Source of the DNA: Anolis carolinensis
Taxonomy: Eukaryota
Assembly: GCF_035594765.1 (NCBI RefSeq)
Contig: NC_085845.1
Coordinates: forward strand, 197,548,897 to 197,612,896
DNA length: 64,000 nucleotides
Direction of reading: 5' to 3'
Numbering within the stretch: the stretch's first letter is position 1; each line of letters opens with the position of its first letter. Both the position numbers and the translations under genes were made by a program. Under the pieces are notes generated by a model, which was not told the DNA's origin, ran no database searches, and saw nothing but the letters and a program-made list of their open reading frames with translations. Of the stretch, positions 13,571 to 43,349 are shown piece after piece.

Positions 13571-13774
13571 GAACTTTTAGTTTACAAACCATCAGTCCAA
13601 TTCTACAAGTTTAAACACTGAACCACCTTTATTGATGGTCCTGGTGATTCTGCAGTGATTCCCCACCTGTTCCAACACAAAATATCTGGCTATTTCAGCA
13701 TCAAGGACTATAAATACACTTTCCCATCGATCTGTGCACAACAGAGTGGAAAAACCAGACAAGGAGATAAGCAC

Positions 13775-13908
13775 CTGAAGGCAAGATTCTTGGCAGCTGG
13801 GAGCAGTGGATAGAAATGCCGGCAGGAAGGAGGTTTAGCAGCAACAGCAGACAGAGTCACAGTGAGAGAAACGACAGCAACTGTCCGGACCAGGAATCCC
13901 CTTGCCAT
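13775..13908 (-). CDS. NUDT9: NUDT9 first coding exon (N-terminal targeting peptide)
   Basis: MARGFLVRTVAVVSLTVTLSAV...AF resembles the human N-terminus MAGRLLGKALAAVSLSLAL. Its phase-2 donor matches exon 2. Upstream acceptor at ~14037. Confidence 0.85.
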
Positions 13909-14232
13909 ACCATGGAGCGTCTTCACGGAAAAAAGTGTCTCTCCAGAGAGAACGGTCCAGTATTTGTGGCACAGTCTGGACACCGAGGAGACCAACTATG
14001 ACTCATCTGAATGTTGTTTCCTTATATTCCTTGTTCTCTAGAAAACAAAGCGATAGCCATTTCGTTATGTTACATCACGCTTCCGAGTGGAATCTGCACA
14101 TTTGGTTAGAGATCTTAAATAAGATATTTATCTCCAATGTTTGGTCTGTTGCAGTGAACATACACAATTTAATAATGTGGTCCACAGCCACTTAAGAGCA
14201 ATTATACAGCTTCTTTGCAAGGGGATCTTGTA

Positions 14233-14653
14233 CCGTGTTTCCCCGAAAATATGACAGTGTCTTATATTAATTTTTGCTCCCAAAGATGCTCTAGGTCTTA
14301 TTTTCAGGGGATGTCTTATTTTTCCATGAAGAAGAATTCACATTTATTGTTGAACAAGAAATTAACATTTTTAATATATACTGTACAGTAGTTGTCGTCA
14401 TAAACTAGCATAACCAGACAAACTGTGAATCCTATCAAGAATTTCTTGTTACTAGCAATATTTCCATGTACAACACTTTATAGTATGTATATTTACCGAT
14501 CCTGCATGCTCTGGTGTTCTGTTCGGCAGGCATGCTTCCCAACAAAAACTTTGCTAAGTCTTACTTTCAGGGGAGGCCTTATATTTAGCAATTCAGCAAA
14601 ACCTCTACTAGGTCTTATTTTCTGGAGATGTTTTATTTTAGGGGAAATAGGGT
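14233..14653. mobile_element. Tc/pogo-type non-autonomous DNA transposon (partial second copy ~26115-26320)
   Basis: TIRs CCGTGTTTCCCCGAAAATA / TATTTTAGGGGAAATAGGG, flanked by TA. Confidence 0.7.
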
Positions 14654-14980
14654 AGTAGAAAGTTGGTAACGTAAGATTTCATAGACTCAAGTCTACAAAA
14701 GCTTATGTCACCCACTTATTTGTCTTAACTAAGTATCAGAGATGCCATGGGATCCCTTTGCATACTGATGCAACATGGCTATGTTAATGGGCATTACTTC
14801 GTTAACAGAAAATTTGGTGCTAGAGGCAAAAATAACATGGAACGAGTAAGGATCGGTTCCTACACCACAGGCAAGAGGAGCAGTTCAATCTACAGGGTGT
14901 TTGAAACAGAACTCCCTATTCACCATTTAATTATAGAATAATTATAAAAAGTAGTAATAATTACATGCCAGTTGTAAGTA

Positions 14981-15303
14981 CAGTAGAGTCTCACTTATCC
15001 AAACCTCGCTTATCCAAGCCTCTGGATTATCCAAGCCATTTTTGTAGTCAATGTTTTCAATACATCATAATATTTTGGTGCTAAATTCATAAATACAGTA
15101 ATTACTACATAGCATTACTGTGTATTGAACTACTTTTTCTGTCAAATTTGTTGTATAACATGATGTTCTGGTGCTTAATTTGTAAAATCATAACCTAATA
15201 TGATGTTTAATAGGCTTTTCCTTAATGCCTCCTTATTATCCAACATATTCACTTATCCAACATTCTGACGGCCTGTTTATGTTGGATAAGTGAGACTCTA
15301 CTG
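14981..15303. mobile_element. Tc1/mariner MITE (other copies at ~1993-2461, 17471-17793, 33126-33448, 41911-42233, 42359-42909)
   Basis: TIR CAGTAGAGTCTCACTTATCCAA, TA target duplication, near-identical ~323-bp copies. Confidence 0.85.
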
Positions 15304-15619
15304 TAATTAAAAGTAGATATATGTATATTATAATTATATATAACTATATATATATATATATAATTACATGATTATATTAATTATACTGATACTGTGTAAT
15401 TATTAATATCGTATTAATGCAAATTATTAATACACAAGACAAAATCCACACTTTACCCATGTTATAATATTGTATACTATCTATATAATGGCATGATTAC
15501 AATAAAACTAATTATTAGTCTAACATTAGTACAGTACTACTATTAGTCTGCAAATTATTTAATGCAGAAAAATACTATATTTTCCCAATTTCATAATATT
15601 TTACATCTATAGAAAAGCC

Positions 15620-15960
15620 CACTCTCACCTCCATACAATTTCCTTCCTTGTTTTCTGCACCCCAGAAGGACCTGCCCCTTTAAGAAATTTCTTCCCCGTG
15701 ATTGGTTATTACAGGAAAAGAATGCCCGCCTCACCCTCAGCCATTGGCTGTTTCCTCCCCGTTTGCCTGACACTGCATAAAAAAGACATTGATGCAGACG
15801 AATAGTCTTCGAGCTCTCCATTCTTAGGTCCCGTATCTTGAGAAACATTACGTCAGAGATCCCAACGTCAATCTCAGCCTGACCACACCCATAGGCGGGC
15901 TTTAAACTGTCCAAGAGCCAATCCCGTCCAAGTTCTCGCTCAGTCAATGAACCATAGACA
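15620..15960 (-). promoter_or_regulatory. NUDT9: Probable NUDT9 promoter and non-coding first exon
   Basis: GC-enriched island in AT-rich DNA with three CCAAT boxes, GC-box and CRE-half sites. Candidate donors at ~15735 (GG|GTGAGG) and ~15629 (AG|GTGAGA). Confidence 0.55.
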
Positions 15961-16164
15961 TAGAAACGTATAGAGTTACACAGCATTGCAATATTTAGGC
16001 TGCTCTAAACTATTTTTTTCTGATCCAATGTCATTAATGAGCTATTACTGAGTTTTTAAATTATCAGTTGTTGTAACCTTACCTGTATATACTCCCTTTG
16101 TTCTGAAAAAAACTGAATACATTGAAACAGATCATGGCTTATGCAAATTCAGACTTTGTGTAAC

Positions 16165-17275
16165 TCTGTAGCTAATCCTTTCTATTTATACTGCCCTCTT
16201 GTGGTTGTTTCTCAGCACTAGGTTCGTAGGTTCCTATAGGCCAGGAGCCAATCCTTTCTATCAATACACTGCCCTCTTGTGGTTCTATCTGAGCACTAAA
16301 TTAATACATTTGTTTAGGCCAGGAGCTAATCCTTTCTATCTATATACTGCTGTCTTGTGGCTGTATGTGAGCACTGCATTCATATGTTGCTACAGGCCAG
16401 GAACTAATCCTTTCTCTCTATATACACTGCCTGCTTGTGGTTGTATCTGAGTACTGCATCCATACATTCCTATAGGTCAGGAACTAATCCTTTCTATCAA
16501 TACATTGCACTCTAGTGGTTGTATCTGAGCATTACATTAATACATTTCTTTAGGTCAGGAACTAATCCTTTCTATCAATACATTGCACTCTAGTGGTTGC
16601 ATCTGAGCATTACATACACACATTCCTATAGGCCAGGAGCTAATCCTTTCTATCAATACACTGCCCTCTTGTGGTTCTATCTGAGCACTACATTAATACA
16701 TTTCTTTAGGACAGGAGCTAATCCTTTCTCTCTATATACACTGCCTGCTTGTGGTTGTATCTGAGTACTGCATCCATACATTCCTATAGGTCAGGAACTA
16801 ATCCTTTCTATCAATACATTGCACTCTAGTGGTTGCATCTGAGCATTACATACACACATTCCTATAGGCCAGGAGCTAATCCTTTCTATCAATACACTGC
16901 CCTCTTGTGGTTCTATCTGAGCACTACATTAATACATTTCTTTAGGACAGGAGCTAATCCTTTCTCTCTATATACACTGCCTGCTTGTGGTTGTATCTGA
17001 GTACTGCATTCATACATTCCTATAGGTCAGGAACTAATCCTTTCTATCAATACACTGCACTCTAGTGGTTGTATCTGAGCACTGCATACACACATTCCTA
17101 TAGGCCAGGAGCTAATCCTTTCTATCTATACCCTGCCCTCTCATGGTTGTATGTGAACGATGCATTCATTCATTCCTTTAGGCCAGGAGCTAATCCTTTC
17201 TATATCTATACACTTCTTTGTTAGGTTATATCTGAGTACTGCACTCATAAATTCCTATAGGCAGCTAATCCTGTC
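16165..17275 (-). repeat. Tandem array of ~14 units of 78-80 bp, most carrying a co-oriented CTCF-like motif
   Basis: The AATCC anchor recurs at 16173, ~16249, 16327, 16405, 16485, 16563, 16641, 16719, 16799, 16877, 16955, 17035, 17113, 17191 and 17266. Minus-strand cores are CCACAAGAGGGCAG, CCACTAGAGTGCA and CCACAAGCAGGCAG. Confidence 0.9.
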
Positions 17276-18449
17276 CTTAATTTGTTTATGTTGGATAAGT
17301 GAGACTCTACTGTAGATTTAAAAAAATATGTGAAATCAGTGTGAAAAATCAACTATGTATGTATCACTCTTTTTATGAAACATGGAAATGAATCGCCAGT
17401 ATATACCTACCTAGCACAAAATAGCTATGACGGAAACTGTGAATCAAATAGTTGGCCTCAGACGGTTTTACAGTAGAGTCTCATTTATCCAACGTAAACG
17501 GGCCGGCAGAACGTTGGATAAGTGAATATGTTGGATAATAAGGAGGGATTAAGAAAAAGCCTATTAAAAATCAAATTAGATTATGATTTTACAAATTAAG
17601 CACCAAAACATCATGTTATACAACAAATTTGACAGAAAAAGTAGTTCAATACGCAGTAATGCTATGTAGTAATTACTGTATTTACGAATTTAGCACCAAA
17701 ATATCATGATGTATTGAAAACATTGACTACAAAAATGCGTTGGATAATCCAGAACGTTGGATAAGCGAGTGTTGGATAAGTGAGACTCTGCTGTACTTCA
17801 AAATCCATTTTATTTTATAATTTTTTGTGCAATTCCGGTAATGCATTTGTGGAACACCATTTGGCAGCCACTGGTGTAGAAGCATTTAATGTCCTTTCCT
17901 CCTCAGCCAGAAATCCCTCAAAAGAGTCAATGGACTACAGTTACACTTCCAAAAAAATATAACTTAATTTTTAACAGCACAATGCCAAGCAAAGGTTGCT
18001 TTGAGTGAGAGAACTGGGGTTGTGGGAAGAGGAAAAAGGGAACTCTGTGGCTTTGGTTTTAGGGAAGATCCAAAGAGACGAGTGACTCACATGGAGTGGG
18101 TTTTTGCATATTGTGGCAATTGTGCTGCGACTGCAAATCCTAGGCAAATTTGCTCTGTATTTTTCATGCCACACACATATACTTTGTCATCATCACAACA
18201 CCAAAAGCTCAGCTGCTGGGGGAATTCTCCAAGTGTGGGAAAAGGAAATTGAAATTCAACTTTTTTTTTTTGTTTAAGCACATTTGATTGTGACACTCTT
18301 TGGGTCAACAGTTCAAACCCACAACTTGGACAGTACAGTACTGTGTTCAATCATCATCATCATCATCATTTAATTACTTATTAATTGCCCTCCATTCAAG
18401 ATGCTCTAGGCGATTTACAAGCTAAATTGTAAAGGATAAAAAATACATA

Positions 18450-19980
18450 TGATGGCCTTCCAAGAGTAGGGTCTTGGCGGTGGGTCCATAGGTGATTGTG
18501 GAGTCCTATTCTTGACCTGCATGTTCTTTCACAGTGAGGACATCAGTTTCAAGGTGGAAGATGGTCCCAGTCAGGGTTGGCTTGATACACCTTCCTCTTG
18601 GCACGTTTCTCTCTTTCACCCTCCATCCATGCCTCTTCAAATTCCACAGCACTGCTACTCACAGCTGACCTCCAGTTAGAGCACTCAAGGCTTCCCAGTT
18701 CTTGGTGTCTATGCCACAGTTCTTAAGGCTTGCTTTAAGCCCATCTTTAAATCTCTTTTCCTGTCCACCAACCTTACATTTTCTGTATTGAGTTGGGAGT
18801 ATAGTAACTGCTTTGGGAGATGCTGATCTTTGGGCATTCGGACAACGTGGCCAGTCCAGCGGAGTTGATGGCGTAGGAGCATCGCTTCAATGCTGGTGGT
18901 CTTTGCTTCTTCCAGAATAGAGACTGTAAAGAACTAAGAACAACTAAGGTTCTTTCAGGCAGGGGGGAATTTTTTTATCCCACCGCTGCCACCAATTTGT
19001 AAGGAGCTAATTACGACTGCCACCAATTTGTAAGGATGCAACCACCAAAGACTCAGGGAGGAGACCTTTTACTTTTTTCCCCCTTTCTTCTTCTTATTCA
19101 CTTTAGATGGTAGCGTAACTTGGTTTATAATATATGCGACAGAGGCTTCGATGATGGAAAAACAAGAACAAGTTTATTCAGGCACAGATCTTAGTGGTTA
19201 CAATATTGTTTCTCACTTGGAGGAATTTTTATTAACAGTTACAATACTAGAATGAGATGAGTCAAACTCTCTAAAGTGTCACTTCTTTCTCTGCTACTTT
19301 TAAACCGCAGTCACCCCTGTGATATACGATCACAGATTCTCTGTTCCTTACCAGGACACAGACTACATTAAATAAGTGACCAAACCGACTCAAAATGACC
19401 AATTGAGTCCCCTTGATCCCCTCAACCTAGGATCAATCTTCCCTGTGCCTCATCAGAGCACAGACTGACTCTCTTTTTAAACTCTGCACTTCTTCAACTA
19501 AACAGCAGTTGGATCCGCCCACTTCTCCATGGCAACCAGCCTCTGAGTGCTGAGATGCAGTAACTGTAATACTTACCCTTTTAAAACACAAACACACAAT
19601 TAAACATAACATCTGTAAACCAAAAATTCGTACTTCATTACATTGACATTTGTCCACCTGTCTTCCCAAGAGATTTGCAGGATTTTCCAGAGGCGACGTT
19701 GGTGGAATCATTCCAGAAGTTGAATGTGACATCTGTAGATGGTCCATATTTCACAGGCATAGAACAGAGTTGGGAAGACTATGGCTTTATGAACAAGCAC
19801 CTTGGTCTCCCTATGAATGTCCTGATCCTCAAACACTCTCTGCCTCATTTGGAAAAATGCTGCACTTGCAGAGCTCAGGCCGTGTTGTATTTCAGCGTCA
19901 ATGTTGACTTTTGTGGAGAAATCAACCCAAGCTGTTACACCCAATGCAAATTGCGGATGATGGAGATTGGCATCTGACAT
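18450..19980 (-). mobile_element. RTE/BovB LINE fragment interrupted by an LTR-element remnant
   Basis: RT C-terminal peptide STKVNIDAEIQHGLSSASAAFFQMRQRVF..TKVLVHKAIVFPTLFYACEIWT. The BovB sequence resumes after 19642. Confidence 0.8.
18925..19642 (-). mobile_element. LTR retroelement remnant with tRNA-Leu primer-binding site
   Basis: TGTAA...TTACA termini. 18977-18994 ATCCCACCGCTGCCACCA equals the 3' 18 nt of tRNA-Leu(AAG) including CCA, i.e. a PBS on the minus strand next to an LTR end. Confidence 0.65.
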
Positions 19981-20189
19981 AGCTGGAGGGATACCAGGCT
20001 GAGGAACTCTGATTTAGATTCTATTGGGAAATCAACATTTATGGACAAACTGTTTGCTGAGACACGTCCTCTTAAAAGCCAAAGGAAGAAACAAAGTGCA
20101 CAATGTTTGTGACATTTCCAGTTCAGGGTCAAGGCAGAGTGGAAGGCTGATTGTAAATATTTGGATAGGAGCTGCCAGCTCATCTGGGC

Positions 20190-20499
20190 ACTTTCTCACG
20201 AAAGGGACAACAGAAGCTTACATAAAAAAGTTGTCCCATAACTATCTTGGGACATTTACAGTAAAGGGGACCTTGATCTGGCCTTGAGAAATCCCTCCAG
20301 AAGAACCACCTTCTTCTGATTTGCCTTTTCCACCCACATGGCTTGGAAACCGTCCCCAAAGGGACTCTTGGAGGAAGTTAATCACACGAGATAACCTTCC
20401 TTTTGGAAGGTATTTAAGCAGCTCCCGGGTCCCTAGATAGATATGCCCACATGCTCTGCGTGGTGACTGACAACTAACCCACAGGGATCCTTCCACAAG
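20190..20499 (+). promoter_or_regulatory. Candidate promoter and non-coding exon 1 of the ENDOD1-like nuclease gene
   Basis: TATA-like TATTTAA at 20411 and donor AAG|GTAAAA at 20499. Upstream motifs: ETS (GAGGAAGT), GATA (AGATAA), TTC-N4-GAA at 20193, kB-like GAGAAATCCC. The first coding exon has an acceptor at 23071. Confidence 0.45.
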
Positions 20500-21469
20500 G
20501 TAAAAGCACTTTCCTTCTTTTTAAAAGACAGTCGTGTGATTGGAAAAGAAAGAAGCTCATAGAGGTCAAAGCAGAGTGAATTTGAATTGAGATGTTGGCA
20601 GGAAGGTCAATCAATCGAGTGAAGGTCTATGGCACAGTGTAGCTGCTTTGGGTCTCCGGTAAAAGAGGAAAGACAGTAGTAGTAGTAGTAATTAATTTAT
20701 TACCTCTCATAAATATATGAGGGGAAGTCATAGGAAGGAGGGAGCAAGCTTGTTTTCTGCAACCCTGGAGACTAGGATGTGGAACATCTGCTTCAAATGA
20801 CAGGAAAGGAGATTCCACCTGGACATTAGGAAGAATTCCCTCACTGTGAGAGCTGTTCAGCAGTGGAACTCTCTGCCCCAGAGTGTGATGGAGGCTCCTT
20901 CTTTGGACGCTTGTAAATAGATGCTGGATGGCCATCTGTTGGGGATGCTTTCAGTGCGATTTTCCTCCTTCTTGGCAGGGGGTTGGACTGGATGGTCCAC
21001 GAGGTCTCTTCCAACTCTGGGGTTCTATAATTCATGTTTAGACTTGCATCCTATCCCAAAAGGTGCATCTGTTAGGACAGATCATCTATACCAGGCATGA
21101 TCACACTTCGTCCCTCCAGGTGTTTTGGACTTCAACTCTCACAATTCCTAACCGCCTGCCGGCTGTATCCAGTTCTTTAGTCGATTACGAAGGGACCTTG
21201 CACTTGGTAGAATACAATGACAGAATACACATCATGATGTTTGTTTATCATTGTCATTCTGAAAAGAGAACTGGTTTTGGAAGCACTGTTGCTAGGACAG
21301 ATCATCTATACAGATATTCTGTTCCTGGGCATTTTTATAGAACAAGTTGGGAAACAGGTTCCATTTTTTTTGTCCTTCTGGGCAGTGATACGCTACTAAT
21401 TGCCAATACATTGTTCACATGGCCATGACTGATAGTCTTTGTCAATCTCCCTGAATTTAGCGAGTATAA

Positions 21470-23081: not shown

Positions 23082-23360
23082 ATGTTGCTGGCGTTGCTTC
23101 TCATCAGCTGGTACGGCGCTCCAGGAAACGGCGAGGTGGTGACCTCTTTTGAGGACACCTGTCCCCACTTCTTCTTCAGAGGGGTCCCTCCAAGTCTTGG
23201 GCTTGAGCCTTCGCGTCCTGCTCGGATTTGCCAGCGTTACAAGAACCAGTATCGTTACGCCACGCTGTACGACAAAGACAACCGCATCCCGGTGTACTCG
23301 GCCTACATCTACAACCCTGGGACGGCGAAGAGACCAAGTACTTGGATGGTTGAACCCCAG
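23082..23360 (+). CDS. ENDOD1-like secreted DNA/RNA non-specific endonuclease, coding exon 1
   Basis: Signal peptide MLLALLLISWYGAPGNG, then EVV..CPHFFF..ICQRYKNQYRYATLYDKDNRIPVYSAY..WMVEPQ; donor CAG|GTAAGA. Confidence 0.9.
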
Positions 23361-23510
23361 GTAAGAAAAGAAGCAAGAGTTCCAGAGTGTTCTGGCTCAA
23401 CACCTCTCTCTATTGTTCATTTATGTGCATATTAATTGTGTCAGAACAAGATGTATCACTATTTGAGGCAAGTGCTGCCATTGACATCTTCTTGCCCCAT
23501 TATATATATA

Positions 23511-23992
23511 CTAGCTGTGCCCGGCCACGCGTTGCTGTGGCGAAGTATGGTGGTATGGGAAATAAAGTATTGAGGTAGTTAAGGTAAAGGGTAAACGTTT
23601 TCCCCTGACATTAAGTCCATTATAAATGGGTTATATAGCTGTGTGGAAGGGCCTTGAATCTACACTGGCATATAACCCAGTTAAAATCAGATAATCTATA
23701 TTTTATAGGCAGTGTGGAAGAGGCCTAAGTGAGGCCTAACTCTGCCTGTCCCCTGGACTGAGTGGGTTGCTAGGAGACCACGTAGGCGGAGCTTAGCCTT
23801 CTAACTGGCAGCAATGGGATAAAAACAATTATTCCTCTCCCTCTAATTAGGACTTTATTTTTCTTTTCTTTTTGTTGTATGAATGTAGAGGCATGGATGA
23901 GGGGTTGTGCTGCCAAGTTTAGTGTTTCTGGAATGTGTGGTTCTATTGTTTTGTCCTAGGCTGAAATTTCATTACCCTTTTATATATATAGA
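23511..23992 (-). mobile_element. Non-autonomous Helitron
   Basis: The minus strand starts TC, ends with the hairpin GCCACAGC-AAC-GCGTGGC followed by CTAG, and is inserted between A and T with no TSD. Confidence 0.85.
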
Positions 23993-23994
23993 TA

Positions 23995-24525
23995 ATATTT
24001 ATTTATTTTCATTCATTTAAGTATACCTACATTGCAAGTGTTTGTTGCATACAGTGCAATACTTTCATCTACTAGTCTTTCATAATCATTTCTCAGACAA
24101 TATATTTTCAATAAGGGGTCACAGTTTTCTATTTGAGTAGTACATATAAAAATATGATAAATTCCAAATTAATATCAGTTTCCTCCCTGCCTTCAGTCTA
24201 TTAGCTTCCTCTATGTACATTTTTAGATTAATTTTACATTGAGATGTTGGATCATTGGTTGCCATTCATTAACAAAGTTCTCTAAAGGTTCTCCTCTTAA
24301 CTGTATCGTTATTTTGTCCATCATCAGCAACTCTATAATATATTGTTCCAGTTCTGCTAAGGGAGGTACCTCTGAGGTTTTCCAATATCTAGCGTATACT
24401 ATCCGAGCTGCCACTGTCACGTAAAAAAAAAATCTTCCATATTTCCTTTCCAATTCTTCTTCGGGCATGTTCAAAGGGTACATTTGTGGTGTCATTTTAA
24501 AATTTGTATTTAATATCTTTTCTAG
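23995..24525 (-). mobile_element. L1-clade LINE 3' fragment
   Basis: ORF2 C-terminal peptide FYVTVAARIVYARYWK...ELLMMDKIT...W, followed by an A-rich tail. Confidence 0.7.
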
Positions 24526-25258
24526 ATGTACATGAATCTGTTTCCGGTAGTTGTTACTTCTTGCCCCATTATAATGTTAATTGCCCCCTTTGTTACATTG
24601 CCTACAATATGTAAATGTGTTGTTGAAGGCATTCATGGCCAGAATCACTGGGTTGCTGTGAGCTTCATTGGGCTGTATGTCCATGTCCCAGTAGAATTAT
24701 TTCCTGATGTTTCGCCTGCATCTGTGGCAAGAATCCTCAGAGGTTTGTTCAGATGTCTGTTGGAAATGAGGCGAGTGGAGTGTATTTATGTCTGTGAAAT
24801 ATCCAGGGTGGGAGAAAGAACCCTTGTCTGTTTGAAGCAAATGTGGATGTTGCAATTATCCTTCACTCCCTCCATGTGGAGACCTAATCTGATATCATGG
24901 GAAACCTCCCCATCTTCTGGGCTGGGCTGTGGCGCAGGCTGGAAAGCAAGCCAGCTGCAACAAATCACTCTGACCAAGAGGTCATGAGTTCGAGGCCAGC
25001 CCGAGCCTGCGTCTTGTCTCTGTCTCTGTTCTATGTTATGGCATTGAATGTTTGCCTTTATGTGTGCAATGTGAGAAGGTGAGAAGGGCAGAATATAAAT
25101 GCTGTAAATAAATAAATAAATAAATAAATAAATTAGCAAGCTTGATTGTTAATTGCAAATAATATCTACCTGCTGTTAGGAATGGTGGGAGTTGAAGTCC
25201 AAAACACATAGAGGGCCAAAGTTTGCCCATGCCTGATCTAATCCCCTTTTCTCTACAG

Positions 25259-25804
25259 CTTGTTGATTCAAGCTTCCAAACTGAAATGGAATCGGAAGGA
25301 TCTTTCCTATATGACAGCAGTTCCAAAGAAGAGGCGCTTCGTAACAGCCAGGCCGTTTTGCAAGATTACAAGAACCTGACCGGCCTCAACCGGGGGCACC
25401 TGAACCCCAACGGGCACCAGCCCGACAAGGACGCCAAGGCCTCCACTTTCAGCCTGACCAACATCGTGCCCCAGAACATCAAGCTGAACGGTGGCACCTG
25501 GAACAACTACGAGCAGACAACCATGGCGAGGAACACGGAGGGGTGCAGTGAAACCTTTGCCGTGGTGGGAGCCGTGCCGGGGAACAACTACGTTTCCGGA
25601 GGAAGGGTCAACAAGCCCAGCTACATGTGGTCGGCTGCCTGTTGCGTCGTAGATAACAATCACATGAGATCCTGGGCCATCATTGCCAGGAATGACGAGA
25701 ATGTAGTCCAGACTCTCACTTTGGGGCAGTTGGAGGACAAGCTGGCCGAATTCTATAATCGGAATTCCATCCTCCTCTTTGACGATGACTGTCCGCGCGA
25801 ATAA
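25259..25804 (+). CDS. ENDOD1-like nuclease, coding exon 2 (catalytic); total ~274 aa
   Basis: SQAVLQDY..NRGHLNP..ASTFSLTNIVPQNIKLNGGTWNNYE..VVGAVPG..RVNKPSYMWSAACC; acceptor TACAG|CTT; stop TAA at 25802. Confidence 0.92.
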   Translation, partial: LVDSSFQTEMESEGSFLYDSSSKEEALRNSQAVLQDYKNLTGLNRGHLNPNGHQPDKDAKASTFSLTNIVPQNIKLNGGTWNNYEQTTMARNTEGCSETFAVVGAVPGNNYVSGGRVNKPSYMWSAACCVVDNNHMRSWAIIARNDENVVQTLTLGQLEDKLAEFYNRNSILLFDDDCPRE

Positions 25805-32835: not shown

Positions 32836-33888
32836 CTAAGCGAGGGACAGTTGTATAAGAACAGAACATAAGTTAGGAAACAGCAATAACCAGTTCCCAA
32901 AGAGAAGAGTAGGACTGTATTTCAGCATAAAAAGGAATGAAAAGAAATATATCAATGGTTTCTAAAACAGAACATTTTCCATCGAGGAAAGAAGTCCCAG
33001 CTTTGGCTCCTTTAAACACCAGTTTTATTTTGTTTCTCCAGTTCAGGTGCCTGGTAATTAAAGTAGACTCTCTTTATCCATGGAACCTGAATTCACAGAT
33101 TCAGCTAATCATTCATATGTATATACAGTAGAGTCTCACTTATCCAACACTCGCTTATCCAACGTTCTGGATTATCCAATGCATTTTTGTAGTCAATGTT
33201 TTCAATATATCATGATATTTTGGTGCTAAATTCGTAAATACAGTAATTACAACATAGCCTTACTGCATATTGAACTACTTTTTCTATCAAATTTGTTGTA
33301 TAACATGATGTTTTGGTGCTTAATTTGTAAAATCATCACCTAATTTGATGTTTAATAGGATTTTCCTTAATCTCTCTTTATTATCCAACATATTCTCTTA
33401 TCCAACGTTCTGCTGGCCCATTTACGTTGGATAAGTGAGACTCTACTCTATATCATTCTCAAGCTCTCTCTGGCAACTGTGTGACATTTTATATAAGGAA
33501 CCCCATTTTACTTTGCCATTGTATATCAAGGGACTTGAGCAGTTGAAGACCAAAACATCTTGGAACCAAACTCCAATGGATACCAAGGGACCAATGTCAA
33601 CACAACTATTGTTTCTGGGGCACAGATTCAATAGGGATCAAAGTAAAGTAAAGGTTCATGTTTGCATTAAATACATTAATACTAATGCTTACTTAGTATA
33701 ATGTTGCTAAAACACTTTGCTAAGCCAAGCTCAGCCAAATGTGATGAAAGCCAGTTTCTAAAACGTTGCACGAGTCCAGATTTAACAGTTGATAAATGGG
33801 AGGGTGAGAAACAACTGGGAACAAAGAGAGAAGGAAACACAACATCTTTTAAAGAAATAGTTTGGATAAAAAATGGGAAACGTCTTAC

Positions 33889-41332: not shown

Positions 41333-43349
41333 TAATGCACTCTTACAGTCAAGACATTCTTCCTAATTCAGGTGGAATCTCAATTCTTGTGCTTGAATCC
41401 ATTGGTTTGTGTTCCCTATTCTCTGGAATAGGAGGAAACAAGCTCATGCCCATCTTCTACATGGCATCCTTTTAAATCTTTAAATACAGCTATCATATCA
41501 CCTTTTCGTCTTCCCTAAACTAAAAATGCCCTGGTTTGTAAGGCATTCCTTGCGCAGATACATTTTCATGCCTTTTGATATATTGATCGAGATCTCTCTG
41601 AACATGTTCTAGCTTGTCATTATCCTTCTTGAATTGTGGACATAGTCTTCCATGTGGACATAGTATTATGATTCCACTGCCTTGGCTGCATCCTATAGAA
41701 TTTTGGAATTTGCAGTTCAGCATACTTTCCAACTGTTCTGATATGTCAGAGACAGTACTGATTAAAGCGCTGTTATCCAATTCTCTCAACTGCTTTTAAG
41801 GCATCCTACTTTTTCTCCTCTCCTTCTCCACTTATGGGACAAAGAAAGCATCATTTGGAGACATATACTGTATTTTTTCTAAGTCATGGGTGTGTTACCA
41901 TATATATATACAGTAGAGTCTCGCTTATCCAACGTAAATGGGCCGGCAGAACATTGGATAAGTGAATATGTTGGATAACAAGGAGAGATTAAGGAAAAGC
42001 CTATTAAACATTAAATTAGGTTATGATTTTACAAATTAAGCACCAAAACATCATGTTATACAACAAATTTGACAGAAAAAGTAGTTCAATACACAGTAGT
42101 GCTATGTAGTAATTACTGTATTTACGAATTTATCACCAAAATACCATGATATGTTGAAAATATTGACTACAAAAATGCGTTGGATAATCCAGAACGTTGG
42201 ATAAGCGAGTGTTGGATAAGTGAGACTCTACTGTATATATGAATACAACTTTACCCTTGTTGGTGGCACTGAAATGAGTGTGTATCTTATAATCAACGAC
42301 ATCTCAGAATTGAAGAAATACGGTCAAAGGAATCAACTTTCTATTCCAGGTGCAAATACAGTAGTCTCTCACTTACCCAACATCTGCTTATCCAACATTC
42401 TGGATTATCCAACGCAGTTTGCCGCTCACCCCAACCCACAGCTGTTTCTCTAAACAGCAAGGATTGAACTTTTTATGGATTTAATTTCTGGCAATGTTGC
42501 TACTGTACGTTCATTTTATGCAATTCTATCTTTATTTGTAGCCAATTTGTTAGTAGCCAATGTTATTGTAGTCAATGTTTTCAATACAATAGAGTCTCAC
42601 TTATCCAACATTCGCTTATCCAACATTCCGGATTATCCAAAGCATTTTTGTAGTCAGTGTTTTCAATACATCATGATATTGTGGTGCTAAATTTGTAACT
42701 ACAGTAATTACTACGTAGCATTACTGCATATTGAACTTCTTTTTCTGTCAAATTTGTTGTATAACATGATGTTTTGGTGCTTAATTTGTAAAATTATAAC
42801 GTAATTTGACATTCAATAGGCTTTTCCTTAATCCTTACTTATCATCCAACATTTTCGCTTATCCAACGTTCTGCCAGCCCGTTTATGTTGGATAAGTGAG
42901 ACTCTACTGTACATACATACATCCCTGCATGACAAAATTGTAAACCCAATTAACATCACATTGAAACAATTGTCCATTCACAACAGAAAGTCAGTGATAA
43001 GCATGCAAAAATATTAAATAAAGCACCCACCCAAAAAGTATTCGAAATCTATTTTACAATGAATTGCCCTGAACCACAGCACCAGAAAACAATAGCAGAA
43101 ATGCCTACATAATCCTACAAAGCTACAAATCTGAGCATCCTATAGTTTGGATTCAAAGCAGCATTATGGGACATATGTTGCATGTAGATCTGGAACCAAT
43201 GCCTTCAGAAATGTTATTTAAATGAGGTGGAAATTTGGCTGATTCATCCTTGATAGTTTGTGCTCTTTATGAGTTGTCATTGACACTGGCAGTCCCTCCT
43301 TTCCTTACCATAAATCACCAAACAGCAACCCAAAGATTTTGCTGCTTAC

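What the first reader, a model, noticed from the sequence alone, without database searches (positions are those of the whole stretch)
16165..17275. Tandem array of co-oriented CTCF sites: candidate repeat-built insulator between NUDT9 and an immune-type gene block
Seen: about 14 units of 78-80 bp, 13 with a recognisable minus-strand core. Four are CCACAAGAGGGCAG (plus-strand starts 16191, 16269, 16661, 16897); the others are CCACTAGAGTGCA(A/G), CCACAAGCAGGCAG, CCACAAGACAGCAG or CCATGAGAGGGCAG. Many units also carry TG(C/T)A(G/A)T(A/G)CTC starting 18 nt upstream of the CCAC. Established: the CTCF core is CCASYAGRKGGCRS, and zinc fingers 9-11 bind an upstream TGCAG module at this kind of spacing. 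Clustered same-direction sites make strong loop anchors. Inference: an extended CTCF site was amplified into a boundary ~200 bp upstream of the probable NUDT9 promoter, with sites pointing toward NUDT9. It would shield NUDT9 from the nuclease/IL2RA regulatory block. The units are nearly CpG-free, so binding should be largely methylation-insensitive, and copy number could tune insulation.
Basis: partly seen in the sequence, partly recalled or inferred. Interest (0 to 1): 0.85.

Follow-up and report, generated by a model that had tools for sequence, protein, structure and literature searches.

The report
Anole minisatellite of CTCF-type sites
A 1.1-kb tandem repeat upstream of the lizard NUDT9 gene is built from a 78-bp unit that looks like a two-part CTCF binding site; the same repeat sits at the same spot in a second anole species, so it is an old candidate chromatin-boundary element, but nobody has yet shown that CTCF binds it.

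Summary
Window 16170-17262 (Anolis carolinensis rAnoCar3.1) is a 14-unit, 78-80-bp minisatellite with a 3-unit higher-order repeat. Thirteen units carry a minus-strand CTCF-like core. Four are strong (p 8e-8 to 3e-7, the best sites in 64 kb), one is medium, and eight carry substitutions at near-invariant positions.

New here: Anolis sagrei has the orthologous array at the same junction. It has about 26 units and 25 co-oriented cores; 10 reach p<=1e-6, and 22 have the upstream TGCAGT module at the same spacing. Sceloporus has neither the array nor a site between conserved anchors. The array therefore arose in the anole lineage and has persisted since the two anoles split (<50 My).

The annotated NUDT9 start codon lies 2.26 kb away, not 200 bp. 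What lies 170-550 bp away is a conserved, CpG-enriched CCAAT block of unknown role. The motif columns are not significantly better conserved than the rest of the unit, and recent amplification in A. sagrei copied weak cores. No occupancy or Hi-C data could be reached.

Best reading: an amplified two-part CTCF site, probably bound at its intact units, turning over neutrally; an insulator role is plausible but unproven. The scan's first readers noted at least six similar arrays elsewhere in this genome (unchecked).

The parts
16170..17262 (-). Minisatellite: 14 units of 75-80 bp with a 3-unit (236 bp) higher-order repeat. A degenerate partial unit runs on to about 17275. Record coordinates CM069371.1:197565066-197566158.
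   Evidence: TRF; unit table; unit identity matrix with units 4=8, 6=9 and 7=10 at 100%; nhmmer hits to all 14 units.
16189..16207 (-). Strong CTCF-type core, unit 1: CAACCACAAGAGGGCAGTA, 20.4 bits, p 8e-8. Upstream module poor (4 of 8).
16267..16285 (-). Strong core, unit 2: GAACCACAAGAGGGCAGTG, 18.4 bits, p 3e-7. Upstream 5 of 8.
16659..16677 (-). Strong core, unit 7, p 3e-7. Upstream TGTAGTGCTC (6 of 8), 18 nt before CCAC.
16895..16913 (-). Strong core, unit 10 (identical to unit 7), p 3e-7. Upstream 6 of 8.
17053..17071 (-). Medium core, unit 12: CAACCACTAGAGTGCAGTG, p 3e-6, with upstream TGCAGTGCTC (7 of 8).
16345..17149 (-). Span that holds the eight weak cores (19-mers starting at 16345, 16425, 16503, 16581, 16739, 16817, 16975, 17131; p 1e-5 to 4e-5). 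Each has a substitution at a near-invariant matrix position.
15624..15999 (.). Conserved, CpG-enriched block with CCAAT/ATTGG boxes, 170-550 bp on the NUDT9 side of the array.
   Evidence: 79% identical to A. sagrei L004 5495-6174 and 66% to Sceloporus L002 598-958; CpG o/e 0.58-0.71.
13775..13908 (-). NUDT9 coding exon 1 (MARGFLVRT...). Start codon at 13908, splice donor GT at 13774-13773.
   Evidence: Sequence; NCBI gene call ends at L001:827 = window 13908; N-terminus of P0363; exon 2 matches human NUDT9 1q33 at E 3e-24.
17283..17322 (+). Solo 40-bp end of the abundant Tc1/mariner-like MITE, abutting the array's right edge.
17468..17798 (-). Full MITE copy, inverted relative to the copy at 14972-15312. 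The two bracket the array region. The insertion is specific to A. carolinensis relative to the aligned A. sagrei flank.
17807..18369 (.). Conserved flank on the nuclease side of the array; used as an orthology anchor.
   Evidence: 82.5% to A. sagrei L004 1138-1677; 18048-18303 is 77% identical to Sceloporus L002 3198-3441.
23082..25801 (+). ENDOD1-like nuclease gene (274 aa, Endonuclease_NS domain): the neighbour on the other side of the spacer.

Best explanation
The array is an anole-lineage minisatellite made by tandem amplification of one two-part CTCF-type site: an upstream TGCAGTGCTC module, a 9-nt gap, then the core CCACAAGAGGGCAG.

Shown:
- The ancestral unit carried both parts.
- The array already existed, at the same junction and in the same orientation, in the common ancestor of A. 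carolinensis and A. sagrei.
- It is absent from the orthologous interval of Sceloporus.
- It keeps turning over in each species by duplication of 2- or 3-unit blocks.
- Each species retains several high-scoring cores among decayed ones.

Inferred:
- CTCF binds the intact units (4-5 in A. carolinensis, about 10 in A. sagrei), helped by the absence of CpG in the core.
- All bound molecules would present their N-terminal, cohesin-stalling side toward NUDT9. The cluster would then act as a one-sided barrier or loop anchor for cohesin arriving from the NUDT9 side, in the 9-kb spacer between the divergently transcribed NUDT9 and ENDOD1-like/IL2RA genes.
- Barrier strength would depend on how many intact units an allele carries.
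- Unit-level evolution looks neutral, so any function probably needs only a few intact units.
For: - Motif strength against shuffles and against the rest of the window.
- The upstream module sits 18 nt before CCAC. This is a 6-bp linker plus the 3 nt before the core, within the 2-7 bp linker range described in PMC12885311.
- The orthologous A. sagrei array is at L004 2846-4937 with collinear flanks and the same left junction. It has 25 co-oriented cores, 10 at p<=1e-6, 22 with an upstream module matching 7 of 8, and 9 units with both. The strong 19-mer CAACCACAAGAGGGCAGTG in A. sagrei differs from the four strong A. carolinensis 19-mers only at a flank base (first or last).
- The two species' consensus units differ at 2 of 78 positions plus one 4-bp indel, so the ancestral unit can be read directly.
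- Sceloporus has conserved anchors on both sides but no array, no unit homology and no hit below 2e-5 between them.
- The two-part CTCF motif is conserved from lamprey to human (PMC5504073).
- CTCF ChIP-seq peaks centred on CTCF motifs lie at the ends of Hi-C chromatin loops in a rattlesnake (PMC9248877).
- The upstream module and multiple copies both raise enhancer blocking (PMC12885311 and PMC11417384).
Against: - No occupancy, accessibility or contact data could be reached.
- Within A. carolinensis the core is no better conserved among units than the rest of the unit (diversity 0.18-0.24 against 0.14-0.16). The most conserved block is TGATAGAAAGGATT.
- Between species the extended site has divergence 0.187 against 0.242 outside it, and 11 of 78 circular windows are as low.
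- In A. sagrei the recently amplified 160-bp block carries only the weaker cores CAACAAGAGGGCAG and CCACAAGAAGGCAG.
- In A. carolinensis no unit combines a strong core with a good upstream module.
- The two 10-mers quoted in PMC12885311 match the units at only 6 of 10 positions, which chance gives about 10% of the time.
- No convergent partner site lies within the window.
Confidence: 0.5

Rival explanations
1. Neutral relic. A minisatellite that happens to have been seeded from a CTCF-like sequence and is now selectively irrelevant. It is either not occupied (for example because it is packed in repeat-associated heterochromatin) or occupied without any effect on NUDT9 or the nuclease/IL2RA genes. 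Persistence in two anoles would reflect only the long life of a self-renewing tandem array.
For: - Unit-by-unit divergence between species (0.218) is about equal to flank divergence (about 0.2) and to within-array diversity (0.17-0.19).
- There is no significant excess conservation of the motif columns.
- Weak-core variants were the ones amplified recently in A. sagrei.
- Nine of 14 A. carolinensis units have lost a strong core.
- The array is absent in Sceloporus, so it is not needed for NUDT9 regulation in iguanians generally.
Against: - A 78-bp unit reaches core p<=3e-7 by chance with probability about 5e-5, and the upstream module at the right spacing adds a factor of about 1e-3 to 2e-2. 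The seed was therefore very probably a real CTCF site.
- Strong CpG-free cores are usually bound (general knowledge, not tested here).
- Both species still keep several intact sites after up to 50 My.
Confidence: 0.33
2. One member of a genome-wide class. Anole genomes carry many minisatellites whose monomer is a CTCF-type site. They could have been spread by a mobile element or satellite family, or generated repeatedly because CTCF-bound sites are prone to tandem duplication. The NUDT9 array would then be one instance, not a locus-specific invention. This overlaps with the best explanation.
For: - The scan's first readers listed at least six other co-oriented CTCF-motif tandem arrays in this genome among 757 windows. 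One is described as a bipartite monomer with about 19 sites in 1.5 kb, which implies a period of about 79 bp (unchecked AI notes).
- Summed contig depth over the array is about 15 to 110 times that of the unique flanks in four runs, and in three of them it exceeds what 14 copies explain. The tool itself warns that depth is not a copy number.
- Squamates are known to form dispersed SINE-derived satellites with alternating monomer types (PMC10702118).
Against: - No second copy of the unit was found in the 64-kb window, in 27 kb plus 34 kb of A. sagrei, or in 22 kb of Sceloporus.
- The unique flanks are single-copy by depth.
- The array is orthologous in two species, so this copy is not a recent insertion.
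Confidence: 0.3
3. An array for another factor. The most invariant part of the unit is AGAAAGGATTAGCTCCTG, which holds GGATTA/TAATCC, the site type of K50 homeodomain proteins (OTX, PITX, CRX, GSC). The array would then be a homeodomain-site cluster or enhancer, with the CTCF resemblance secondary.
For: - TGATAGAAAGGATT is the least variable 14-column window among units.
- 13 of the 33 plus-strand TAATCC in the window lie in the array.
- The block is also kept in nearly all A. sagrei units.
Against: - A 6-mer is weak evidence; it occurs 50 times on the two strands of the window.
- Its conservation may simply reflect where unequal exchange aligns the units.
- No matrix test was done.
- The CTCF match is far more improbable by chance.
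Confidence: 0.05
4. A gene product. The array would encode a repetitive peptide (an open frame of 92 codons at 16172-16447, since 78 bp is 26 codons) or a structured or processed RNA.
For: - Open frames run through several units.
- Contigs from small runs that may be RNA cover 15797-16279.
Against: - No homologous protein was found.
- Pfam gave only sub-threshold noise.
- No Rfam family matched.
- Folding energy equals that of shuffles (z -0.01 and -0.81).
- Unit lengths of 75-82 bp break the frame.
Confidence: 0.02

Closest known systems
Mammalian tandem-repeat CTCF anchors (DXZ4, FIRRE, ICCE; the tRNA VNTR at human 1q23.3)
   Same: Each monomer of a tandem array carries a CTCF motif. The motifs are co-oriented, orientation matters for contacts (PMC5899087), copy number varies, and the repeat sequence evolves fast while the CTCF motif is kept (PMC3491370, PMC6125249, PMC4041453; listed).
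   Different: Those monomers are kilobases long, GC-rich and mostly X-linked, with allele-specific binding. Here the monomer is 78 bp, little more than the extended site itself. It is AT-rich, nearly CpG-free, not linked here to the sex chromosome and gene-proximal. The sequences are not homologous. Binding is shown for the mammalian arrays but not here.
Clustered same-direction CTCF sites at boundaries, and synthetic multi-copy CTCF insulators
   Same: Several co-oriented sites within about 1 kb. The literature quoted in PMC12885311 and PMC11417384 reports that insulation rises with the number of sites and with the upstream module.
   Different: Natural clusters are usually independent sites tens of base pairs to kilobases apart, not a regular 78-bp tandem repeat. 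Whether neighbours 78 bp apart can be occupied together is untested here.
Transposon-borne expansions of CTCF sites (for example rodent SINE B2)
   Same: A lineage-specific repeat process multiplies a CTCF motif.
   Different: There the copies are dispersed by retrotransposition. Here amplification is local and tandem, the unit matches no interspersed repeat in the window, and the flanking MITEs are unrelated to the unit.
SINE-derived satellites of squamates (sSat; PMC10702118)
   Same: Squamate-specific short-unit tandem arrays (67-145 nt) with alternating di- or trimeric monomer subtypes and more homogeneity in longer loci.
   Different: Derivation of this unit from a Squam SINE was not tested (no SINE consensus on hand). 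That paper makes no link to CTCF.

Membership tests
CTCF binding site (core motif) | Match to the about 19-bp core matrix at a stringent threshold (p<1e-5), better than shuffled sequence | tested here: met
   Four units score p 8e-8 to 3e-7 and one scores 3e-6; 0 of 2000 shuffles reach these scores. Eight further units lie at 1e-5 to 4e-5.
CTCF binding site (extended, ZF9-11 upstream module) | Upstream TGCAGT-type module at the canonical distance from the core | tested here: inconclusive
   In A. sagrei 22 of 25 units match TGCAGTNCC at 7 of 8 positions, starting 18 nt before CCAC. In A. carolinensis 5 of 13 do, and none of these has a strong core. Chance for 7 of 8 over six spacings is 0.15%. 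The 10-mers printed in PMC12885311 match at only 6 of 10. JASPAR MA1929 and MA1930 were not available.
CTCF binding site | Occupancy by CTCF in cells (ChIP, CUT&Tag or footprint) | not testable with these tools
   The runs offered were contigs of unknown library type.
Insulator / domain boundary | Insulation minimum or loop anchor in Hi-C; enhancer-blocking activity | not testable with these tools
   No contact data could be reached. Hi-C libraries exist for A. sagrei (PMC9596491).
Insulator / domain boundary | Convergent partner site on the side the motifs point to | tested here: not met
   No plus-strand hit below 4.8e-5 lies anywhere in the window, and only a weak one (13790, p 8.6e-5) lies to the left of the array. 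Loops usually span more than the 16 kb available on that side, so this is weak evidence.
Tandem-repeat CTCF anchors (DXZ4/FIRRE/ICCE type) | Tandem array with one co-oriented CTCF motif per monomer, kept across species while the repeat turns over | tested here: met
   13 of 14 cores are co-oriented in A. carolinensis and 25 of 26 in A. sagrei. The two species have different higher-order repeats (236 bp against 160 bp).
Tandem-repeat CTCF anchors (DXZ4/FIRRE/ICCE type) | Kilobase-scale, GC-rich monomers; sequence homology to those loci | tested here: not met
   The unit is 78 bp, GC 0.40, with 2 CpG in 1.1 kb. No homology was expected or sought.
Transposon-borne CTCF sites | The unit is part of an interspersed element with dispersed copies | tested here: inconclusive
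   No other copy in the window or in 83 kb of related loci. The excess contig depth over the array leaves other copies possible.
Minisatellite | Head-to-tail units of 10-100 bp, variant units interspersed, degenerate edges, recent internal duplications | tested here: met
   central units are 95-100% identical in register and edge units are 66-82% identical.
Squamate SINE-derived satellites (sSat) | Monomer aligns to a segment of a Squam1/2/3 SINE | not tested
   No SINE consensus was available. The unit matches no other repeat in the window.

The most novel reading that the evidence does not exclude
Anole genomes hold a class of long-lived minisatellites whose monomer is a complete two-part CTCF site. 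Each would be a self-renewing, copy-number-variable, one-directional chromatin barrier. The NUDT9 array, kept at one junction for up to about 50 My in two species, would be the first dated example. The other arrays flagged by the scan in this genome (in MFSD12 and PIP5KL1, at the edge of the PLA2 cluster, between CHD5 and RPL22, and between GEMIN4 and TLCD3A) would be further members. That would mean tandem amplification of bound CTCF sites is a regular way for lizards to build or reinforce boundaries, in parallel with SINE-driven CTCF expansion in mammals.
Probability: 0.2. Interest if true: 0.8.

Novelty: new variant of a known kind. Interest (0 to 1): 0.55.

Why it matters
Tandem repeats that carry CTCF sites are known mainly as kilobase-unit macrosatellites on the mammalian X. 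Lineage-specific CTCF site gain is known mainly from retrotransposons.

Here the repeat unit is essentially the extended binding site itself, in a reptile. It is dated by orthology to before the split of two model anoles, and the two species differ naturally in copy number and in the fraction of intact sites (4-5 of 14 against about 10 of 26).

If CTCF binds it, the locus offers a natural dosage series for asking how many same-direction sites are needed for a boundary. It also gives a test of whether 78-bp spacing allows neighbouring occupancy. If CTCF does not bind, the locus is a clean example of a strong motif cluster that persists without function, which is a useful caution for motif-based boundary prediction.

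Tried and rejected
- **Protein-coding repeat.** The 92-codon frame through the array found no homologue and only sub-threshold Pfam noise.
- **RNA gene or structure.** No Rfam match in 13000-21000. Unit folding energy is the same as for shuffles.
- **Unit derived from the flanking MITE or another repeat in the window.** blastn with word size 7 and nhmmer find the unit only in the array.
- **Single-copy progenitor in Sceloporus.** None between the conserved anchors. The best PWM hit there is p 2.5e-5.
- **A. sagrei through the nuclease gene.** The 10-kb flank fell short of the orthologous position. It was reached instead through NUDT9: an exon-2 search, then a fragment from that search used as the query, then the 90% cluster. 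Exons were searched apart, by reference, and full-length proteins came from the database.
- **Reads.** All runs were contigs, so they gave no start site, strand, expression level or copy number. The depth excess over the array is reported only as a lead, because the tool says depth is not a copy number.
- **Look-up of earlier findings by sequence.** Blank.
- **Selection test on the motif columns, within and between species.** Not significant.
- **JASPAR MA1929 and MA1930.** Not available. The consensus 10-mers printed in PMC12885311 gave unimpressive matches.
Full report
**1. What is there**

Window 16170-17262 is one tandem array. Tandem Repeats Finder reports period 78, 13.9 copies and 81% matches, with higher-order periods of 236 and 314 bp. 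Cutting at the invariant AATCCTTTCT gives 14 units of 75-80 bp.

Units 4 and 8, 6 and 9, and 7 and 10 are 100% identical. Units 11 and 12 are 99% and 95% identical to their counterparts. The edge units 1, 3, 13 and 14 are only 66-82% like the others. This is the usual picture of a minisatellite that renews its centre by block duplication while its edges decay. It is by far the largest tandem repeat in the 64 kb.

**2. The CTCF-like motif**

I scanned with a position matrix for the CTCF core.

- Thirteen of 14 units score p<1e-4, all on the minus strand.
- Four are strong (19-mers at 16189, 16267, 16659 and 16895; p 8e-8 to 3e-7).
- One is medium (17053; p 3e-6).
- Eight are weak (p 1e-5 to 4e-5).
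- Nothing else in the window is below 1e-5.

Dinucleotide shuffles of single units never reach the observed score for units 1, 2, 7, 10 and 12 (0 of 2000). Shuffles of the whole array give 0.14 hits against 13 observed.

The weak units carry changes at positions that are nearly invariant in the matrix: G to T in CCACTAGAGTGCA, AG to CA in CCACAAGCAGGCAG, and so on.

The upstream element starts 18 nt before CCAC. Against TGCAGTNCC (from memory), five units match 7 of 8 positions. Chance gives that 0.15% of the time over six spacings. All five have weak or medium cores. The strong-core units match 4-6 of 8. The two 10-mers printed in PMC12885311 match at only 6 of 10.

The spacing corresponds to a 6-bp linker. 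This is within the 2-7 bp range given in that paper, which names 5 bp as the commonest.

The array has 2 CpG in 1093 bp, neither in a core.

**3. Where it lies**

The window is Anolis carolinensis rAnoCar3.1 (GCA_035594765.1, record CM069371.1). Locus L001 from that record is 100% identical to window 13082-35804.

NUDT9 is on the minus strand.
- Exon 2 matches human NUDT9 (PDB 1q33) at E 3e-24.
- The Nudix exon matches Pfam NUDIX.
- The NCBI gene call and the protein P0363 put the start codon at 13908. Exon 1 ends at 13775.

The ENDOD1-like nuclease (Endonuclease_NS domain) is on the plus strand, with its coding start at 23082.

The array therefore sits in a 9.2-kb spacer between two divergently transcribed genes. 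It is 2.26 kb from the NUDT9 start codon, not 200 bp from it.

What does lie 170-550 bp from the array is a block at 15624-15999.
- It is conserved in A. sagrei (79%) and in Sceloporus (66%).
- It has a local CpG o/e of 0.58-0.71 and carries CCAAT/ATTGG boxes.
- A second CpG maximum lies at the annotated exon 1 (13801-14300).

The block could be an alternative promoter; NCBI lists a 293-aa isoform X2 that starts in exon 2. It could equally be an enhancer. I could not tell which.

An abundant Tc1/mariner-like MITE of about 330 bp flanks the region: 14972-15312 and 17468-17798, with a solo end at 17283-17322. It is unrelated to the unit.

**4. Comparison with other species (the main new result)**

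I fetched three loci.
- The nuclease locus of Sceloporus undulatus (L002).
- The nuclease locus of Anolis sagrei (L003).
- The A. sagrei NUDT9 locus with 10 kb upstream (L004).

To reach L004, NUDT9 exon 2 was searched by reference. A database fragment from that search served as the next query, and the 90% cluster of that hit yielded the A. sagrei protein.

A. sagrei has the same array at the same place, L004 2846-4937.
- It is 2.09 kb long, with about 26 units of 78 or 82 bp and a 160-bp two-unit higher-order repeat at 90% matches.
- The flanks are collinear on both sides.
- The junction on the NUDT9 side reads the same in both species.
- All 25 cores point toward NUDT9, as in A. carolinensis.
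- Six cores score p<=5e-7. Three of these read CAACCACAAGAGGGCAGTG. That 19-mer does not occur in A. carolinensis, where the four strong cores read CAACCACAAGAGGGCAGTA or GAACCACAAGAGGGCAGTG. The shared part is the 14-mer CCACAAGAGGGCAG and its inner flanks.
- Four further cores score 1e-6.
- Twenty-two of 25 units have TGCAGT(G/T)CT at position -18, and nine units combine a core at p<=1e-6 with that module.

The consensus units of the two species differ at two positions and one 4-bp indel. The ancestral unit therefore read ...TGCAGTGCTCAGATACAACCACAAGAGGGCAGTG..., a full two-part site.

In Sceloporus, conserved anchors bracket the orthologous interval: window 15624-15999 matches L002 598-958, and 18048-18303 matches L002 3198-3441. 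Between them there is no tandem repeat, no similarity to the unit and no hit below 2e-5.

The array thus arose after anoles split from phrynosomatids and before the A. carolinensis/A. sagrei split. PMC9596491 puts that split at less than 50 My.

**5. Is the motif under selection?**

I could not show it.
- Among A. carolinensis units the core is no less variable than the rest (mean pairwise difference 0.18-0.24 against 0.14-0.16). The least variable window is TGATAGAAAGGATT.
- Between species, all-against-all unit divergence is 0.218. That is about the same as the unique flanks (17-21%) and as within-array diversity. The near-identity of the two consensus units therefore reflects averaging over many independently mutating copies, not constraint.
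- The 34 columns of the extended site diverge by 0.187 against 0.242 outside it, but 11 of 78 circular windows are as low.
- The block amplified most recently in A. sagrei carries the weaker cores CAACAAGAGGGCAG and CCACAAGAAGGCAG. The strongest cores sit in older, peripheral units.

**6. Mechanism and odds**

A 78-bp unit reaches a core of p<=3e-7 by chance with probability about 5e-5. The upstream module at the right distance adds a further factor of 1e-3 to 2e-2. The seed was thus very probably a genuine CTCF site.

Three papers bear on what follows.
- The two-part mode of binding is shared by lamprey, chicken and human (PMC5504073).
- CTCF ChIP-seq peaks centred on CTCF motifs lie at chromatin-loop ends in a rattlesnake (PMC9248877).
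- Upstream modules and multiple copies increase enhancer blocking (PMC12885311, PMC11417384).

I therefore think it more likely than not (about 0.6) that the intact units bind CTCF. The claim that the cluster works as a one-sided cohesin barrier between NUDT9 and the nuclease/IL2RA genes is inference. I put a selected insulator role at about 0.25-0.3.

On orientation: the 3' side of the core, where the N-terminus of bound CTCF sits, faces NUDT9. By the rule quoted in PMC12885311, the array should best block enhancers or extrusion coming from the NUDT9 side.

**7. A possible wider class**

The scan's first readers noted at least six other co-oriented CTCF-motif tandem arrays in this genome. One of them is described as a bipartite monomer repeated about 19 times in 1.5 kb. 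These are unchecked AI notes, and I could not fetch those loci.

Summed contig depth over the array is about 15 to 110 times that of the unique flanks in four runs. This could mean more copies elsewhere or longer alleles, but the tool warns that depth is not a copy number.

No second copy of the unit occurs in the about 147 kb I could read.

**8. Verdict**

The feature is a real, old (anole-wide) minisatellite of two-part CTCF-type sites. It is a new small-unit variant of the known kind 'tandem repeats that carry CTCF sites'. Binding and insulation remain untested, and there is no detectable selection on the motif.

Limits of this analysis:
- MA1929 and MA1930 were not available.
- The read data were contigs only.

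Noticed in passing
window 14972-15312, 17468-17798, 17283-17322; also 1-262, 511-624, 1993-2465, 10859-11172, 33118-33450, 41909-42235, 42577-42911: A very abundant MITE of about 330 bp with terminal inverted repeats TACAGTAGAGTCTCACTTATCCAAC (Tc1/mariner-like, with a TA at the ends). There are at least nine copies in 64 kb, and summed contig depth is 1e5-1e7 in four runs. Two copies in opposite orientation bracket the array region.
   Followed up: partly
window 15624-15999; L004 5115-6174; L002 598-958: A conserved non-coding block next to the array, with CpG o/e 0.58-0.71 and CCAAT/ATTGG boxes. In A. sagrei a 100-bp piece of it is tandemly duplicated at 97% identity (L004 5395-5598). It may be an alternative NUDT9 promoter (isoform X2, 293 aa, starts in exon 2) or an enhancer.
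   Followed up: partly
window 19920-20690; L003 9492-10230; L002 5604-6328: A block of about 750 bp, 86% identical in A. sagrei and 74% in Sceloporus. The A. sagrei nuclease gene model (294 aa, with an 18-residue N-terminal extension) starts inside it. It is probably the nuclease gene's 5' exon or promoter, which would put that promoter about 3.2 kb from the array.
   Followed up: partly
window 13775-13903 and 15797-16279 (run X17): A 176-nt contig of a small run matches 13775-13903, starting exactly at the exon 1 splice donor, and has 47 further letters that lie elsewhere. This looks like a spliced NUDT9 mRNA. The same run has a 482-nt contig across the conserved block and the first two array units, so the array's edge may be transcribed. 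The library type is not on record.
   Followed up: no
window 13538-14196: Runs X12 and X17, from two different studies, share a haplotype that differs from the assembly by about 6% (38 substitutions and 18 gap letters in 659 nt) across NUDT9 exon 1 and its upstream region. This is unusually deep variation for one species label.
   Followed up: no
window 16172-17173 (read laying bins): Summed contig depth over the array is about 100 times the unique flank in X1, X12 and X17 but about 15 times in X4. Possible causes are copy-number differences between animals, other arrays elsewhere, or double counting of collapsed contigs.
   Followed up: partly
every unit of the array, e.g. window 16641-16646: The most invariant part of the unit holds TAATCC (GGATTA on the core-reading strand), the site type of K50 homeodomain proteins. 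Thirteen of the 33 plus-strand copies in the window are in the array, and the block is also kept in A. sagrei.
   Followed up: partly
window 18448-18917 and 19644-19919; L003 and L004, several places: LINE fragments with open frames like the C-terminal part of a reverse transcriptase. They recur three to four times in the A. sagrei spacer, which is 19.3 kb long against 9.2 kb in A. carolinensis.
   Followed up: no
window 620-969: A second, weaker tandem repeat (40-bp unit, 8.8 copies, 67% matches) next to MITE fragments.
   Followed up: no
L004 6450-7307: A. sagrei-specific tandem repeat with 203- and 227-bp units between the array and NUDT9. It carries two weak CTCF-like hits (p 6e-5).
   Followed up: no
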